From Auanema rhodensis (lineage: Eukaryota > Animalia > Nematoda): 64,000 nt of DNA. The DNA is taken from the NCBI GenBank assembly GCA_964057225.1, contig OZ059894.1:16616001-16680000 (forward strand). The letters are read 5' to 3'. Shown here in pieces: positions 3,502 through 46,322 of the stretch. The translations under genes were made by a program, and so were the position numbers. Numbering within the stretch: the stretch's first letter is position 1; every line of letters starts with the position of its first letter. The notes below the pieces were generated by a model. The model saw only the letters and a list, made by a program, of their open reading frames with translations, was not told where the DNA came from and did no database searches.

Positions 3502-6500
3502 ATGAAGTTTAGATGTTTAATATTGCTAGTTCCTTTAGCAACAGCACAAATAAGTAATCAGCTCAAACTTGAACTATCTCAAGTATCTCATTCAGGGTTT
3601 TGTGAAGTTTCTGGATCATGCCGACAATGTCCTGATAAGCGTTATACATACTATAGATGTAACTCCCAGGTGCTAAACACTAAAAGAAAATTGTTATTTT
3701 CAAATTTTAATTTATAGAGAGATTGTTTAAATGGTGAAACATGCACAGAAGGATTTTGTTGTCCAAATATTCAAAACCAACCTCCTATGATGACACAATT
3801 CAATGAAAGTAAGTGAAAGTGTGTGATTAGGTAACCTGTCAGAAAATGTTTTGAATTCTCAACTGTTCAATGTCCTTTATTGTCAGTCAAACACTATTTC
3901 ACAGACAAGCTTCTACTAATCTATGTCCTCGCTTAATGCTTATATAACTTCTCAGCTTTCATCGCTACTACCACATCATCAGCTACAATTCACTTATATA
4001 AACCGGATCCCTTTCCTCTGCCGCCTCTTTTTTTAAAAGATAACTCAATTATTGCTCAAAGTAATGATGTGGATGAAAAATGTGGAGATGGTTCAGACTG
4101 GGTAAATCGTTGTAAGAAAGACTCTGATTGTAATGGCTTATTGATATGCATGGACGGTAAATGTTGTCGAAGTAAGTACTTTTTTCCATCTACACTAAAA
4201 AATCTTTTAAAAAAATGTCTTGTGTACTTCATCGTTCTAAAAATAATCTTTTCGTTTCTTTTTTCTATCGGGCAAACGTACAATCCAATCAACCTTTCTC
4301 ATATACACAACAGATTGACTTACCTTGAACATAATGATGGGCTTTCAGCTCTAATTAAGGTCATGTAAACCCCTTGGGAAAAAATATAAAGTTCGAACTC
4401 AATTTAATTCCTTGTACTAGGTTTTGAGTAAGACTTACATTTAGAGATTTGTCCTATTGAAGCAAATAAAAATTCTTGAAAGTTTGGCATTAAGTGATTT
4501 CACCTAGCCTTAAAATGCCGCATTTTACGATCGCTAGAAACGTTTTGTGCCAAAGTCCTTGGCTAAACTAGTTGCACAGTCAACGTGCAGTAGCTTTTGA
4601 AAGAAGAAATATTTTTCAACATCACAAAATTCCTATAAATAACAAGCTATGGGGTTAGATGATCGCATGAGACTTGAGCTGAAAATAGGAGGTTTCTCGT
4701 TGTTATATAAGAATGTTTCAAACATTAGCTAAACCGGATCATTATGCTACCAACATATAACAATTGAAACTTTTTCAAACGTTAAATTTCATTTCATTTC
4801 TCAAATCATAAATAAATGTATAGAAATTTGAAAAAAGAAATTTGTTTTTACAATACAGGAACAACCTTCTAACACATACTGTTCATCCAAAATAGAATTT
4901 TTTATTTTGAAAACGTAATCTTATAAAGCGGTTGCATCAAGAATTTGGAAAACATTCAAAACACGCAACTGGTATTCCCCTTTTTAACGATATGAATGCT
5001 CAAGAACGTAAAAATGTATTGTGATATAGAATTCTTTAACTATTGTATACAAATATTATTCTGATTATATTAGGTTGTTCGCAGAGAAGACGAGAAATAC
5101 TGGATAAATTGGCAGCGACGGAAATTCTTGGACGAGCAATTCCACAATGTACAGAAGATGGAAAGTACTATAGAAACAAGTAAAATCAATTTTAATTTTC
5201 AGCATAAAAACAAAAACATTTGCATATTTAGACAATGCTTTGCTGGATCAATAGAAAACTGCTGGTGTGTTAACGGATCGGGCAAAAGATTATTGCCATC
5301 AGATATAGAATGCCAAACTAAAATTCGAAGAAAAGAACATAATTGGGCTCGCAAGGCACAGTTACTGCGTGATGAGTTAACTAAAAAACAAAAAGTATAT
5401 TCTTAATGGGATTTCATAATGAAATTTGTTAGTTTTTCAGGATAACTGTACACTTGTAAGAAGAGGAAGTTGTCCAAGAATAAGAGCTGCTGCATCAATA
5501 CCTCCAATCTTATGTAACTGTGATGAAGACTGCTACGGCAATAAGAAATGTTGTGAATATGAAGCTAACCGAGTCTGTATTGAACCAGGTTTTCAATTGT
5601 ATTTTCTTTTAACAATGTCTAGAAAAGCTTTTTTAATATGAATATACAGAATAATTACCTCTTGCAGATTAAAATTTGTCTAGCTCTGGTAATAACCCTT
5701 TATTTGTTATAACTTTTAACATTTTCTGTTATCCTGCTTTTTGTATTAACTTCTCCCGCTTTCTATCCATTTTATCCAATTTATATGAATGTGTTTGCTT
5801 TTACTTGCTTGCAACACTTTATTGTTAGCATCTTCAGCTTTGCTATTTTGCCTAATTCTTTTAATAGATATTTCTTAATTATTCGTTATCTTTCAGTGGC
5901 GTCGAACGACGATATTACACTCCTTTGTGCTTCTAATGAACAATTCTCTGCTTGCCATTCTCCGTGCCAGCCAACTTGTGAAGACCCTACCGTATTACCA
6001 TGCCCATCACCAACATGCCAAGCAGGATGTCATTGCCAACCAGGTTAAAATTGGGAATTATGTTTTTTTTTCTAAAAGTGTTCAATCGTTCGTTCTCGAT
6101 CGCATCCTCTGACCTTAGAGACTATATTCTGAGAACTTAATCCGATGTTCTTTAGAGGATTTTATATGTAATTTTCAACTTTTTGCCTAAATTAGAACGC
6201 ATGTATAGTACTTGGCCTTGCCAAGGTTTTGCAGTCATTTTAATCTCCACTAGGGGACATCGCAAAAAACCCGGGTAGATTCAACTCGTTCTTTCAAAAA
6301 CAGAAATTTAAACAAAGATCAAATAGAAAATTATCTTGAAGGTTTCATTCGACGAGATGGATCTCCACATTCGCCATGTATAGCAAAATCATCTTGTGTT
6401 ATGTACGATGTAACTGCTCAATGCTCAGATCAACGACGAGAATATCAAGGATGTGGTTCGTCATGTCCAATTAGTTGTCAAAATAGAAATTCGCCGAGGC

Positions 6501-34289: not shown

Positions 34290-36649
34290 TCATAATTTGA
34301 GCACTATTTCTTGCTTCAAAACACCTATTTCTGTCCATTCTGAAGAATTTTCAGTTCCATTTAAGCCAGCAAATGCAGATCTGTCGTTAACTCTCAGTTG
34401 TACTGGGTGTTCCTCACACAAACCTGCACTTCGCACAAATTGTACAGCCTGAAAAAAAAAATCAAATAGATGTGATTTTATAAAAAATACCAAATGAACG
34501 GTTTCAGACATTATAGGACCACTTTCTAACTCTGCTACATACTCCATTGCATGACCTGCACGTTTGATTACTTGTGAAGATTTCTTAAATACTAATTTCT
34601 GATTTACAATACACAATTATAGACCTTGAGAGATTTCAGTTGGCCATATAAAAACGGTTTTGAAGCGACTAGAGTAGGAGGTAGATTTGCATGTGGTCCA
34701 GCAATACTTCGACAAACTTTTTCGGTTTGTATAAAGTTGTATAAGGTTTGTACTGATGACCCCTAGATGAAAATTTGAAATATTAAACCTTCCAAATATC
34801 GTACCGAAACCAAAACAGCGGATGTTTCATCGGTCTCCTCCGTTTTACTAGAAGAAGATGTAGATATCATGGATTTACTAAAAATATATTTACTTTTCGA
34901 TAATTTGAGATCACACTCACTGTCTTCTAAACTTCAAGGTATTTTTGGGAGAAACTCCCATATCGTGAAGCCAATCATGATCCTCTCCATTTTTCATTTT
35001 TGTCGGACTATCATCACTGTCAGAAGACAATGGCTTCTCACAATTTTCTTTGTCCTCATTTAAGGAAGCACGGCTGCCTTTATTGAAGTCTAAATATTTT
35101 ATCTAAAATCATTTGAAAACCACAACATTACCACAGGAATCTTCAGATAACAGACTCAATTCATCGCCGTCAGCAGCATCATCAAACTTAAGAGTAGTCT
35201 TAGATAATCGTTTTTTTCTCCATTGACAAAGTTGGAACTCAATACCTATAAATAAAAAAAATATACCAATATAAAATTTTAAAACACTAACCTTCGTTTT
35301 TAAGATATCTACGAAATCCTAAAGTCGTCGGTGTTATGATAGCTACATGACGACTGCCATCAGGACATTGGAAACAAGACATAGAGTCTTCGCCAATATT
35401 TTCTAATTACATTTTTGAAAAAATAGAATTAAAAAATAATGAACCTTGAAAATCGACATCATTTGTCTTGGTAAATAGGGCCGTGAACGAAGAGCATAGT
35501 ACATAAAAAGATTTTCTTTCACCCTTTTTCCAAGAAAGAAAGAGTTGCTCAAAACATTCTGTCCTAAAATAAACTATATTTGCATTATTATGACTAATAT
35601 GAATACCATTCTCCATTCAAATCGTCAAGCATAGATGGAGCCAACGGTGGAACAGATTGTTTAGGCAAAAATTTAAGTAGCGAATCTATCCGAGGATAGA
35701 ATGACATCCAGGGAAACGATGGAAACTGCCAGTACAGGGACGCAGCTTCATAAAGGGCCAGTGGATTAGATGTTTGAACAGGCTAGATTTAAAAAATTAA
35801 ATTAAAACTGAGAGAAATAGCACCTTATCAGAACCATCAAAAGACAGAAAAGATTTCATGCCTGCAGCTCGATCGTTACCGGTTAGCCTCACAGGACAAG
35901 TACCTAAATCTTTGTAAGTCAAAATTTTACATTAAAAAAAACCTGATAAATTAGTACTCTTCATCCAGGGAAATGGAACACGCGAAGTAAGTCGAAGCTT
36001 AGTACCAAGACGTAAATCAGAAGGAATTCTTTCCGAACGTCTCTCTTCCTTTACAGAAATTTTCACAGGATCATTTGAAGAGCCAGGAGAAAATATTTCA
36101 TCCATACTGGAGAAATCAAGAACAGGAGATTGCATCTAACAAATTTTATAATAAATTCAAAAAACAACACCCTTTCTACCATGCTTTTGGATCTTCCAAA
36201 TGACGACCTTTTTATTTTTACCACTTGATGATGTGCAGCAGGTCTACAATCAGAATGGGGTTGAATATCAAAATTTGAAAGCTAACATCATAGCGGAAAA
36301 TGGGTCATTCGCAGTGGTATCATCAGCATCCAAAAACATTTCGTCATCATTCCTTTTGAAGCGCTTGACTTCTGGAGATCTCTTGAAAACATGATGATGC
36401 AAGATAGCCAAAATTGATAGGATACCTTGAAAGGATTGGCAGGTCGCCCTTCACCAGGTGTCATAGGCGGACAGCTTTCGGTGTTAATATCATCTATACA
36501 TGTTAAACCACCAATAGAAACATTGAGACAGCGACTTTAATACAAAAAGTTGGCATATAGAGTGAACAATCAAACCTGCTTCTCCTTTTTAAATGCTTGG
36601 TCATACGCTCTCTTGGATTTTTCCATGCTGGTGATTGCGGCGTTGACAT
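34290..36649 (-). CDS. DONSON: DONSON (downstream neighbour of SON) replisome factor
   Basis: NPF motif; PSDLRLGTKLRLTSRVPFPW; YWQFPSFPW..YPR; FYVLCSSFTALF; TPTTLGFRRYL; LPPTLVASKPF; GPIM. Confidence 0.9.
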
Positions 36650-36756
36650 AATTAAATAAAACAGATAAATACGAATATAGTTAATTATGGCTTTTACAAA
36701 TCTTGAACGTAAGCATAAGTTAATTTGTTAATGACTAGGGCTTCAATAAAATTGCC

Positions 36757-36765
36757 TTTCGCGCC
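36757..36765. promoter_or_regulatory. E2F (EFL-1/DPL-1) site TTTCGCGCC in the ~210-bp bidirectional DONSON/COX16 promoter
   Basis: Exact nematode E2F motif upstream of a replication gene. Confidence 0.55.
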
Positions 36766-36857
36766 ATAATCTATAGTTATCTCGACGACGATTTGCGTAT
36801 TTCCCTAGAGAAATCGACTATTTTCAGCCCATTAATAATTATTCATGTTTCTGCTTG

Positions 36858-37356
36858 ATGAGCAATAGGAATCTTAAATTCTTCCGTGTTGGGCTTCCCT
36901 TTTTTACTATAATCTTTGGAGGGGCATACGGTCTTCATTATTTTCAACAAGTTCGCTACGATTTTCGACGAATTAAGCAGCAAGATAATAATCTTTCTTC
37001 TCTTGTAAGTTTCCTAAATATATTACTAATTACCGTTTCCCACATTGAAGAAAACTAATTTGAGTGAAGGTGGTTTAAAACTAAGAGAAAACGTCACAGT
37101 TGATTCTGTATACAAGGTTTCTTTTTCGTTTTTTTTTACAACAATTATGAGGTCATTATAGGAAATTTCAAATATTGATACAGATAATTGGTCTAATATC
37201 CGTGGACCAAGAGAATTCGAAGATAATTCGGAATATTTAACTGCGAAGTTTGCTTCGTAAAAAAGAGAAAGTATAATATGTTGTTTCTTCAGAGCTGAGC
37301 AGCAAAATCGTAATCAAAAAGAACGAGAAGAAAAGCTACGAAATTTAAATGAGTGA
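36858..37356 (+). CDS. cox-16: Cytochrome c oxidase assembly factor COX16
   Basis: FFRVGLPFFTIIFGGAYGLHYFQQVRYD ... DNWSNIRGPREFE; 3 introns; TGA at 37354-37356. Confidence 0.92.
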
Positions 37357-38668
37357 AGACGCCCCTACACATACAGGTCGCCTTTCTGAATTAGTGTAAG
37401 TTTGTAGTTTTGTTGATTTTAAATATTGTATTTGTTTAGGCTCGAAATAAACGAGGGTTCAGGTGAACCAGACGACAGTGCGTCTATTAGAGCTGAAAGA
37501 GGTTTTTAATGCATTTTATTATAAAATCATATTTTTGTTTTAAATAGGTTCTCCAACTCCTTCTTGTGTAACTCTTGACGCTACTCAGAGTTCTCCTTAT
37601 CCTGTTTTCAAAACATCGGATAGTGATGTAAGAAAATGTTAAAGATTTTCATGGATACTTTTTTTATAGCCTGCTATTTCGACAGAAATAAACACCGTAA
37701 CTGTTCCTACAGTATCTGTTACCGGAGCAACTTCTGATTTTACTGTTAGTGATGAAATTTCTTATACAATTCAGTTTCCAAATTGCAGCCTAATCAGGAG
37801 TTTTTGAAAGTACTTCTTTCTTTGGGATTCGACGAATTTATTTCTGTTCTCGCTCTGAAAAGAACCCAGAATCAAGGAGTCGAACAGGTGATATTTGATA
37901 ATTGTTTTAATTAGTTAGTTGCTAAAGGCTGTTGATTGGATTGTGGAACATTCTAACCCATCTGATTTTGAAGAAGAGGATAGTTCATCTGACGAGTCTG
38001 AGTCTGAGCCTGAGGGTGAGGTTGAGGTTGAATCTAAATTAGAATCAGAAATGGGAGGTAAATGATTAGAGGAGGTGCGCTCCTCAATGAACACATTCTA
38101 GTTGCAAGTTCGGCTGTTTCTGGTACCGGGGCTGCTGGTATTCAGGACTCTATAATGAAAGCTGCAATGGCTGTTCAAAAAAGTAAAGGAATTTTGTTAA
38201 CGTTTGTCTAATTCGTAGTTTTAGGTGCGAGAACTCATAAGATGGTACTAGTTGCCAATATGGGGCTGAAAATGGGTACTGGAAAACTAGCTGCTCAAGT
38301 AGGGCATGCAACTCTGGCAGTATATCGGATGGTATAAACTTGGTATTATGTTTACATTTCTATTATCTTCCAGGCGGATTCTTCTGAAAATGGCAAAGTT
38401 GGTTTGGATTCTTGGTTTCGCCGTGGGCAGGTGAAAATTGTACTTAAAGGAAAGGATACAGAGGAACTTATGGATTTATTCAAATCCGCAAAAGATGCGG
38501 TACTGTGTGTTAAATTATTGAGTTAATGTTCTTTTATAGGGTCTCTTTGCTTACTTAGTGCAAGATGCAGGATACACACAAATACCCCCGGGATCTCGTA
38601 CAGTTCTGGCTGTTTTTGGAGAAAAGGACAAAGTTGATTCCATTACTGGGCATTTGCGTTTACTTTAA
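37349..38668 (+). CDS. UBA-domain peptidyl-tRNA hydrolase 2 (PTH2 family)
   Basis: UBA LLSLGF...ALKRTQNQGVEQAVDWI; PTH2 KMVLVANMGLKMGTGKLAAQVGHA...GQVKIVLK...DAGYTQIPPGSRTVLAVFG...ITGHLRLL*; frame continuous back to ATG 37349. Confidence 0.88.
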
Positions 38669-38869
38669 AATTTCCTATTTGTTTTAAACTGCAATGATCG
38701 GATATTAGTTCATTAGAATGTTATTTTTTCTACAATTTTAAAAATAAAGTTCAATTCTGAAGAGTGTAAATGGTGAATATTGTGTAGTCAACGTGAAGTC
38801 GGAAAAGCTGATAACGCATTGGTCTTTTTAAAATTTCTACAAAGTCTAGAATATGATCATCCAACCCGT

Positions 38870-38889
38870 GCTTCCGTGGCGCAATAGGC

Positions 38890-38925
<36 letters not shown>

Positions 38926-38942
38926 GAGCCCACCCGGGAGCG
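38870..38942 (+). tRNA. tRNA-Asn(GTT)
   Basis: GCTTCCG/CGGGAGC acceptor stem; TTCGG-CTGTTAA-CCGAA anticodon arm; GGTTCGAGCC B box; downstream T run. Confidence 0.97.
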
Positions 38943-39023
38943 AAATATTTTTTTCAGTTTTACAATATTATTTTTTAGTATTTAAGTTTCTTCTGTCTCG
39001 TTTATAGATTCTTAGAACTTTTT

Positions 39024-40472: not shown

Positions 40473-46322
<5,850 letters not shown>

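What the first reader, a model, noticed from the sequence alone, without database searches (positions are those of the whole stretch)
37293..37460. COX16 stop overlaps the UBA-PTH2 start (ATGAGTGA) with no intergenic space
Seen: COX16 ends AAT GAG TGA (37356), and the in-frame start that keeps the PTH2 N-terminal exons and UBA domain is ATG 37349, giving an 8-nt overlap. There is no room for the usual ~100-nt operon spacer. That ATG is the first one after the acceptor of COX16's last intron (ttcttcag, 37292), and an AATAAA lies inside PTH2 exon 2 (37446). Inference: either that acceptor is used alternatively for cis-splicing (COX16) or SL trans-splicing (PTH2), making the two mRNAs mutually exclusive, or a true dicistronic mRNA is read by stop-restart reinitiation or leaky scanning.
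Basis: partly seen in the sequence, partly recalled or inferred. Interest (0 to 1): 0.7.

Follow-up and report, generated by a model that had tools for sequence, protein, structure and literature searches.

The report
COX16 and PTH2 share one mRNA
In this roundworm, and apparently across the phylum, a mitochondrial assembly factor (COX16) and a ubiquitin-binding peptidyl-tRNA hydrolase (UBA-PTH2) lie stop-on-start on one spliced RNA that is almost free of extra start codons. This suggests ribosomes reach the second protein, and probably a third shorter one, by skipping weak start codons rather than by the usual worm trick of cutting the RNA apart.

Summary
COX16 (4 exons, stop TGA 37354-56) and UBA-PTH2 (10 exons, ATG 37349) overlap in ATGAGTGA.

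In four runs of one study, a single fully spliced contig (36808/22 to 38702/61) carries both ORFs. All 12 introns are removed, including 37248-37292.

The layout is conserved:
- RNA contigs of seven other nematode species and genomic loci of four more show COX16 stop and PTH2 start -8, -1, 0 or +25 nt apart.
- Dozens of nematode annotations merge the two genes into a "fusion".

The new evidence is an ATG desert in the mature mRNA.
- No ATG in any frame lies between the COX16 AUG and the PTH2 AUG: 1 seen against 15 expected over 8 species.
- None lies between the PTH2 AUG and its first internal Met: 0 against 28.
- ATGs are normal after that point (31 against 26) and in the window's introns.
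- AUG1 and AUG2 have a pyrimidine at -3. AUG3 (38051) reads G..ATGG and opens MGxxxS, an N-myristoylation consensus found in 67 of 72 nematode homologues.

Best reading: a true dicistronic mRNA read by leaky scanning, probably with three products. SL trans-splicing at 37293 gets no support but is not excluded. This scan has noted similar dicistrons elsewhere in this genome.

The parts
36808..38761 (+). Span of the mature dicistronic RNA, as far as the contigs reach
   Evidence: one contig per run (1375-1428 nt), starting at 36808, 36815 or 36822 and ending at 38702, 38727 or 38761, with 12 GT..AG introns removed and no mismatches.
36845..36868 (+). Short upstream ORF (MFLLDEQ*), out of frame, whose stop lies beyond the COX16 AUG
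   Evidence: It lies within the contigs' 5' part. It is not conserved as such: L012 and L018 have different mini-uORFs.
36858..37356 (+). COX16 gene: exons 36858-37004, 37051-37116, 37162-37247, 37293-37356. The product is 120 aa with Met only at position 1. AUG1 context is ttgATGa (T at -3).
   Evidence: model; PF14138; joints; context.
37248..37292 (+). Last COX16 intron (45 nt, a multiple of 3, with an in-frame TAA if retained).
   Evidence: In one search it is cis-spliced (37247 to 37293) in all four runs.
37349..37356 (+). ATGAGTGA: the PTH2 start codon (37349-51) overlapping the COX16 stop codon (37354-56). AUG2 context is taaATGa (T at -3).
   Evidence: Equivalents are ATGGCTGA (L007), ATGAATGA (Auanema L008), ATGTCTGA (L012, C. 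remanei L019), TGATG (L009, L010), and stop directly followed by ATG (L013, L014, L015, L018).
37349..38668 (+). UBA-PTH2 gene: exons 37349-37395, 37440-37501, 37548-37627, 37670-37744, 37789-37887, 37928-38057, 38102-38182, 38225-38331, 38374-38499, 38540-38668. The product is 311 aa, with no Met between residues 1 and 163.
   Evidence: model; UBA_7 in exons 5-6, PTH2 in exons 8-10; joints.
38051..38053 (+). AUG3: the first ATG of any frame after AUG2. Context is gaaATGg (G at -3, G at +4). It opens MGVASS..., which fits the N-myristoylation consensus, and would give a 149-aa product holding the whole PTH2 domain.
37446..37451 (+).
   Evidence: Present. It has no counterpart in six of the seven other transcripts, and no contig ends there.
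38743..38748 (+). AATAAA poly(A) signal of the dicistronic RNA
   Evidence: The longest contig ends at 38761.

Best explanation
COX16 and UBA-PTH2 are two cistrons of one mature, fully spliced mRNA, transcribed from a start near 36808 and polyadenylated near 38761. The RNA is probably not resolved by SL trans-splicing. Instead, scanning 40S subunits partly bypass the COX16 AUG, which has a weak context with T at -3. They meet no other AUG for 355 nt and initiate at the PTH2 AUG, which is also weak with T at -3. Those that bypass it too meet no AUG for a further 486 nt, until a strong AUG (G at -3, G at +4) at 38051. That AUG would give a short PTH2-domain protein starting MGxxxS, a candidate for N-myristoylation. 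The stop/start overlap is a by-product of extreme compaction of the junction, not the mechanism itself. Shown: the co-linear spliced contig, the conservation, the ATG desert and the start contexts. Inferred: that single molecules carry both ORFs, that ribosomes use leaky scanning, and that AUG3 is used and its product is lipidated.
For: (1): in four runs, one spliced contig spans both ORFs. The acceptor at 37293 is joined to 37247, and exon 37293-37395 is continuous.
(2): RNA contigs from seven other species carry both ORFs on one contig. Genomic loci of Auanema sp. JU1783, Angiostrongylus costaricensis, Parelaphostrongylus tenuis and Caenorhabditis remanei show the same junction.
(3): COX16+UBA+PTH2 is annotated as one protein in dozens of nematodes of several orders. 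PMC12964723 shows the same pairing in Trichinella britovi.
(4): with the proteins held fixed and synonymous codons resampled, out-of-frame ATGs are 1 observed against 15.3 expected between AUG1 and AUG2, 0 against 27.8 between AUG2 and AUG3, and 31 against 25.8 after AUG3. There are no Met codons in the first two regions in 8 species. C. remanei is the same.
(5): the window's eight introns between AUG1 and AUG3 hold 7 ATGs in 352 nt, while the exons hold 0 in 834 nt. The depletion therefore applies to the spliced RNA.
(6): -3 is T at AUG1 in 8 of 8 species. At AUG2 it is T in 9 and C in 1 of 10. At AUG3 it is G with +4 G in 10 of 10.
(7): every nematode COX16 listed has Met only at its start codon (the few other Mets lie in upstream extensions or fused tails of the annotations). 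67 of 72 nematode UBA-PTH2 entries carry M-G-{not EDRKHPFYW}-x-x-[STAGCN]-{not P} just upstream of the PTH2 core. Non-nematode UBA-PTH2 proteins lack this motif and have Met in the UBA region.
(8) The frame relation of the two ORFs varies between species (0, +1, +2), which argues against a conserved readthrough or frameshift fusion.
Against: Only assembled contigs were available, and a de Bruijn contig can join two overlapping transcripts, so a single molecule is not proven (tool caveat). All four runs belong to one study. No ribosome or protein data were seen. Pure leaky scanning does not itself require stop and start to stay within -8 to +25 nt, so termination-reinitiation may contribute. 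G at -3 of AUG3 may partly reflect the acidic (GAN-rich) linker just before it. The species are related, so the per-species tests are not fully independent. One species (L015) has one out-of-frame ATG in COX16, opening a 9-codon ORF. The window has a uORF across AUG1, whose role is unknown.
Confidence: 0.72

Rival explanations
1. Alternative cis/trans-splicing: the acceptor at 37292 is sometimes used for SL trans-splicing. This would give a monocistronic PTH2 mRNA starting at 37293 as the main template for PTH2, with the dicistronic RNA serving only COX16.
For: The genome has canonical SL1 genes. ttcttcag is a good nematode acceptor 56 nt upstream of the ATG, and an intron sits at this distance in Auanema, Angiostrongylus, Parelaphostrongylus and C. 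remanei too. Contigs drop rare or tip-like variants, so SL forms could be hidden (caveats).
Against: A 5' splice site lies 45 nt upstream, so cis-splicing should win, and all contigs show it. No SL-like loose end was seen in four runs, or at the 5' end of any of the ten contigs of other species. ATG depletion of COX16 exons 1-3 and the weak AUG1 context would be unexplained.
Confidence: 0.1
2. Termination-reinitiation: ribosomes that finish COX16 stay on the RNA and restart at the overlapping or abutting AUG, as in calicivirus or influenza B stop-start sites. This would be the main route to PTH2.
For: Stop and start lie within -8 to 0 nt in 11 of 12 species, a tightness that leaky scanning alone does not demand.
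Against: One species has a 25-nt spacer (L011). No conserved UGGGA-type (TURBS motif 1) element lies within 120 nt upstream; it occurs in 2 of 8 species, inside the W-E codons. Reinitiation after a 120-codon ORF is normally inefficient (established knowledge). It does not explain the ATG desert inside COX16, the weak AUG1, or the second desert up to AUG3.
Confidence: 0.1
3. A COX16-UBA-PTH2 fusion protein is the real product, made by skipping exon 37293-37395 or by recoding. The separate ORFs would then be a minor form.
For: Skipping 37293-37395 keeps the frame, because both exon ends are in phase 2. Many genome annotations predict fusions of 394-462 aa, for example C. briggsae P0035.
Against: No contig in four runs, or in seven other species, shows a skipped form; all carry the stop/start junction. 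The frame relation of the ORFs differs between species, so readthrough or frameshift cannot be the conserved route. PMC12964723 lists the T. britovi COX16+PTH2 model as an annotation artefact.
Confidence: 0.04
4. Assembly artefact: two independent mRNAs overlap by at least 31 nt (a COX16 3' UTR running into PTH2, and a PTH2 5' UTR starting inside COX16) and are merged by the assembler.
For: The tool's own caveat is that a contig across two genes shows no single transcript.
Against: The same merged contig arises in 4 runs here and in independent runs of 7 other species. There is no conserved poly(A) signal after the COX16 stop. The sequence signatures do not depend on assembly.
Confidence: 0.04

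Closest known systems
Eukaryotic polycistronic mRNAs read by context-dependent leaky scanning, for example the silkworm tricistronic paralytic-peptide mRNA (PMC2978622, listed). The polycistronic loci of green algae and human MOCS2 are cited from my own knowledge.
   Same: Several ORFs sit on one capped mRNA. The upstream AUGs are in weak context, there are no intervening AUGs, and the last AUG is strong. The ORFs abut or overlap.
   Different: Here the arrangement sits in a phylum that normally resolves polycistronic precursors by SL trans-splicing. It is interrupted by 12 introns, so the ATG desert exists only after splicing. It is conserved phylum-wide, and the third start is internal to the second ORF, giving an N-terminally truncated isoform.
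Nematode SL2-type and SL1-type operons (C. elegans; own knowledge, Blumenthal and colleagues)
   Same: Two unrelated genes are co-transcribed from one promoter in a nematode that has SL1 genes.
   Different: There is no intercistronic spacer of about 100 nt and no poly(A) signal for the upstream gene before the downstream start. The downstream start lies inside the upstream gene's last coding exon, and no SL junction was seen. SL1-type operons have adjacent cleavage and trans-splice sites, but not overlapping coding regions.
Viral termination-reinitiation sites (calicivirus VP1/VP2, influenza B M1/BM2; own knowledge)
   Same: Stop and start codons overlap or abut (AUGnnUGA, UGAUG, UGA-AUG).
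   Different: There is no conserved 18S-complementary motif upstream. The spacing is not invariant. The sequence signatures point to bypass of the upstream AUG, not to restart.
Other candidate leaky-scanning dicistrons noted by this scan in the same genome (COX14-SMIM4, LYRM4-MAT1, TMEM242-PIG-L, rpb-11-IWR1, MED9-RABIF; AI notes, not checked here)
   Same: The organism and the kind of layout are the same: a small, often mitochondrial, first ORF that is ATG-poor, with a weak first start.
   Different: This is a different locus. It has the added second desert and a conserved third start with a myristoylation consensus.

Membership tests
Leaky-scanning polycistronic mRNA | Both ORFs present on one mature (spliced) mRNA | tested here: inconclusive
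   One spliced contig carries both ORFs in 4 runs and in 7 other species. Contigs cannot prove single molecules.
Leaky-scanning polycistronic mRNA | No AUG in any frame between the upstream and downstream start codons | tested here: met
   There are 0 in the window (355 nt). Over 8 species, 1 was observed against 15.3 expected from synonymous resampling, and about 53 by base composition. C. remanei also has 0.
Leaky-scanning polycistronic mRNA | Upstream start codon in suboptimal context | tested here: met
   T at -3 of AUG1 in 8 of 8 species, with +4 A or T. That a purine at -3 is optimal comes from established knowledge.
Leaky-scanning polycistronic mRNA | Downstream ORF output depends on bypass of the upstream AUG | not testable with these tools
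   This needs reporter or CRISPR edits, or initiation-site ribosome profiling.
Nematode SL-resolved operon | Upstream gene has its own 3' end signal, followed by an intercistronic region before the downstream trans-splice site | tested here: not met
   The coding regions overlap by 8 nt. There is no AATAAA between 37017 and 37446, and the one at 37446 is not conserved.
Nematode SL-resolved operon | Downstream mRNA carries SL2 or SL1 at its 5' end | tested here: inconclusive
   No SL-like loose ends appear in the contigs. Raw reads were not available, and contigs drop minor forms.
Termination-reinitiation (TURBS type) | Stop and restart codons overlapping or within a few nt | tested here: met
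   -8, -1 or 0 nt in 11 of 12 species, and +25 in L011.
Termination-reinitiation (TURBS type) | Conserved upstream element (UGGGA motif) that tethers the 40S subunit | tested here: not met
   Motif present in 2 of 8 transcripts only, about 110 nt upstream. Only the core pentamer was searched.
COX16 (PF14138) | Match to the family profile above the curated cut-off | tested here: met
   Exon 1 scores 40.6 bits against a cut-off of 27. Homologues named COX16 appear.
PTH2 peptidyl-tRNA hydrolase (PF01981) with a UBA-like domain | Match to the PTH2 profile over its whole length, plus a UBA_7/UBA match upstream | tested here: met
   Exons 8, 9 and 10 cover profile positions 2-31, 41-71 and 73-115, each above 23 bits. 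UBA_7 matches exons 5 and 6 but below the cut-off when tested exon by exon. Full-length relatives carry both domains.
N-myristoylated proteins | N-terminal M-G-{not EDRKHPFYW}-x-x-[STAGCN]-{not P} (PROSITE-type consensus, own knowledge), exposed by initiation at that Met | tested here: inconclusive
   The pattern is met at AUG3 in the window and in 67 of 72 nematode homologues. Whether translation starts there, and whether the Gly is acylated, cannot be tested here.

The most novel reading that the evidence does not exclude
One intron-rich nematode mRNA encodes three proteins by graded leaky scanning, conserved across the phylum. They are COX16, full-length UBA-PTH2, and a short N-myristoylated PTH2 enzyme started at a strong third AUG. 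If so, worms keep a hidden class of truly polycistronic mRNAs alongside SL-resolved operons. Nematode PTH2 would also gain membrane targeting through a lipid anchor instead of the transmembrane helix of vertebrate PTRH2.
Probability: 0.45. Interest if true: 0.75.

Novelty: new member of a known kind. Interest (0 to 1): 0.62.

Why it matters
Nematodes are the textbook case of eukaryotic operons resolved by trans-splicing, so a conserved mRNA that stays polycistronic and is decoded by leaky scanning runs against the usual expectation.

It also explains a recurrent annotation problem. COX16 and PTH2 are fused, truncated or missed in dozens of helminth genomes (PMC12964723).

It fixes the ratio of a mitochondrial assembly factor to a ribosome-rescue and ubiquitin-linked hydrolase at the level of translation.

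It predicts an unannotated short, possibly lipid-anchored PTH2 isoform. That prediction can be tested directly in C. elegans (C24G6.8 region).

Tried and rejected
- SL evidence. Only Logan contigs could be laid. They show no SL loose ends, which neither proves nor excludes trans-splicing.
- AATAAA at 37446 as a COX16 poly(A) signal. Rejected as a conserved feature.
- TURBS-like UGGGA motif upstream of the junction. Not conserved.
- Readthrough or frameshift fusion. Rejected because the ORF frame relation differs between species.
- Exon-skipping fusion. It stays in frame in the window but is seen in no contig.
- Literature. Searches for COX16 with PTH2, bicistronic, polycistronic, cox-16 and C24G6.8 found no description of this dicistron. 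The only hit is a Trichinella "fusion artefact" example.
- Non-nematode COX16 control. The second COX16 word search returned nematode proteins only, so there was no outgroup for Met content. Non-nematode UBA-PTH2 proteins served as outgroup instead.
- Joined models. Joined (spliced) protein models of the window were not sent to any search tool. Searches used single exons by reference, or contiguous RNA contigs of other species (L007). Joining was done only inside scripts, for frame and ATG counting.

Full report
**Anatomy of the locus**

The window is from a 181-Mb nematode genome with canonical SL1 RNA genes, GGTTTAATTACCCAAGTTTGAG followed by GT, in a tandem array on another contig. On the + strand I modelled two genes.
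- COX16: exons 36858-37004, 37051-37116, 37162-37247 and 37293-37356, giving 120 aa.
- UBA-PTH2: ten exons from 37349 to 38668, giving 311 aa.

Pfam, run exon by exon by reference, confirms COX16 (PF14138), a UBA-like domain and PTH2 (PF01981). The COX16 stop (TGA, 37354-56) and the PTH2 start (ATG, 37349-51) overlap as ATGAGTGA.

A divergent minus-strand gene starts near 36626. COX16 is therefore the first gene of its transcription unit.

**RNA evidence**

The run search found four runs of one study that hold about half the sampled words, as expected for spliced RNA. When laid on 36600-38900, each run gives one contig of 1375-1428 nt. The contigs start at 36808, 36815 or 36822 and end at 38702, 38727 or 38761. 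They have no mismatches, and all 12 predicted GT..AG introns are removed.

The disputed acceptor at 37292 is cis-spliced to 37247, and the exon 37293-37395, which holds the stop/start overlap, is continuous. No loose ends such as an SL were reported. AATAAA at 38743 fits the 38761 end.

There are two caveats. These are assembled contigs from one study, and a contig across two genes does not prove a single molecule.

**Conservation**

The stop-free frame around COX16 exon 1 (given by reference) found homologues in Auanema and strongylids. One hit lies on a 1722-nt Logan RNA contig (L007) on which COX16 (6-368) and UBA-PTH2 (361-1314) overlap by 8 nt as ATGGCTGA. Because L007 is contiguous, its PTH2 ORF could serve as a legitimate full-length query.

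That search gave two results.
- Dozens of nematode annotations carry COX16+UBA+PTH2 as one "fusion" protein. They include Haemonchus, Ancylostoma, several Caenorhabditis, Pristionchus, Panagrellus, Bursaphelenchus, Strongyloides, Toxocara, Brugia and Loa.
- Non-nematode UBA-PTH2 proteins carry no COX16 domain.

A 2026 paper shows the same pairing in Trichinella britovi as an example of a fusion artefact (PMC12964723).

Six more species' RNA contigs all carry both ORFs on one contig (L011, L012, L013, L014, L015-17 and L018). Genomic loci show the same junction in Auanema sp. JU1783, Angiostrongylus costaricensis, Parelaphostrongylus tenuis and C. remanei.

| Stop/start spacing | Where |
|---|---|
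| -8 nt | window, L007, L012, Auanema, C. remanei |
| -1 nt (TGATG) | the two metastrongyles (L009, L010) |
| 0 nt | L013, L014, L015, L018 |
| +25 nt | L011 |

The relative frame of the two ORFs therefore varies between species. This argues against a conserved readthrough or frameshift fusion.

**The decisive signature**

In the spliced RNA of the window, the only ATGs in the first 890 nt are a uORF ATG, the COX16 ATG and the PTH2 ATG. The next ATG is the first internal Met of PTH2, at genomic 38051. The same holds in all eight species with transcripts and in C. remanei.

I held each protein sequence fixed and resampled synonymous codons from the locus's own usage.

| Region | Out-of-frame ATGs observed | Expected | Met codons |
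|---|---|---|---|
| AUG1 to AUG2 | 1 | 15.3 | 0 |
| AUG2 to AUG3 | 0 | 27.8 | 0 |
| After AUG3 (control) | 31 | 25.8 | 4-7 per species |

In the window itself, the eight introns between AUG1 and AUG3 hold 7 ATGs in 352 nt, while the exons hold none in 834 nt. The purge therefore acts on the mature RNA.

The start contexts are graded.
- AUG1 has T at -3 in 8 of 8 species.
- AUG2 has T in 9 and C in 1 of 10.
- AUG3 has G at -3 and G at +4 in 10 of 10.

At the protein level, every nematode COX16 retrieved has Met only at its start codon; the few other Mets lie in upstream extensions or fused tails of the annotations. In addition, 67 of 72 nematode UBA-PTH2 entries have the PROSITE-type myristoylation pattern, mostly MG[AG]xxS, just upstream of the PTH2 core, in most of them at the first internal Met. 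Snake, fish, beetle and sea-urchin UBA-PTH2 proteins lack that motif and have Met inside the UBA region.

**Interpretation**

These are the classic marks of leaky scanning: a weak AUG1, an AUG-free run, a weak AUG2, a second AUG-free run, then a strong AUG3.

The signature is hard to reconcile with PTH2 being read mainly from an SL-trans-spliced RNA that starts at 37293. In that case nothing would select against ATGs in COX16 exons 1-3, or for a weak COX16 start.

Termination-reinitiation would explain the tight junction, but not the deserts. No conserved UGGGA element lies upstream, and one species has a 25-nt spacer. It may still contribute.

The AATAAA at 37446 is not conserved.

I therefore commit to a true dicistronic mRNA decoded by leaky scanning (about 0.7). 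A third, short, possibly N-myristoylated PTH2 product is a further inference (about 0.45-0.5).

**What is known**

Searches of the held literature found no description of this dicistron. The closest published kind is the insect tricistronic mRNA read by context-dependent scanning (PMC2978622).

This scan's own notes list several other candidate leaky-scanning dicistrons in the same genome, including COX14-SMIM4, LYRM4-MAT1 and TMEM242-PIG-L. I saw those notes after my own analysis and did not check them. They suggest this locus is one member of a class.

**Limits**

- There are no raw reads, long reads, ribosome data or protein data.
- The source species of the Logan runs are unnamed.
- The species are related, so the combined statistics overstate independence.
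- Joined exon models of the window were used only inside scripts and were not sent to search tools.

Noticed in passing
window 38869-38943 and 42073-42147: Two tRNA-Asn(GUU) genes on the + strand. The first lies about 110 nt downstream of the PTH2 poly(A) site.
   Followed up: no
window 36600-36735 (minus strand): A divergent gene starts at about 36626 (ATGGAAAAATCC on the minus strand). Its RNA contigs reach 36708-36735, leaving only about 70-100 nt to the COX16 RNA start at 36808. This looks like a very compact bidirectional promoter.
   Followed up: partly
window 36845-36868: An out-of-frame 7-codon uORF whose stop lies 8 nt past the COX16 AUG. L012 has a 3-codon uORF whose stop overlaps AUG1 (TGATG), and L018 has an ATG-TGA start-stop. 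These might further divert ribosomes past AUG1.
   Followed up: partly
window 36821-36828: ttttcag, a good candidate SL1 acceptor, lies 30 nt upstream of the COX16 AUG. Yet the contigs extend 6-20 nt upstream of it, colinear with the genome.
   Followed up: no
L008 (Auanema sp. JU1783) 4543-5770: The UBA-PTH2 gene is not annotated at all in this public assembly. The COX16 model also starts at an upstream ATG (138 aa) that is probably wrong.
   Followed up: partly
L019 (C. remanei) 2003-2510: The public COX16 model (98 aa) stops in the retained last intron. With the intron spliced, COX16 ends SNV* and overlaps the PTH2 ATG as ATGTCTGA. A Logan protein (P0098, 115 aa) matches the spliced form.
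   Followed up: yes
G000 contig C3, about 6.74-7.10 Mb (L001-L006): A large tandem array of SL1 RNA genes with a spacing of about 252 or 504 nt. All score just below the Rfam gathering cut-off (54-62 against 75 bits) despite a perfect 22-nt SL1.
   Followed up: no
window 37293-37395: The exon holding the stop/start overlap is flanked by phase-2 boundaries on both sides. Skipping it would fuse COX16 exons 1-3 in frame to PTH2 exons 2-10 (395 aa). This was not seen in any contig.
   Followed up: partly
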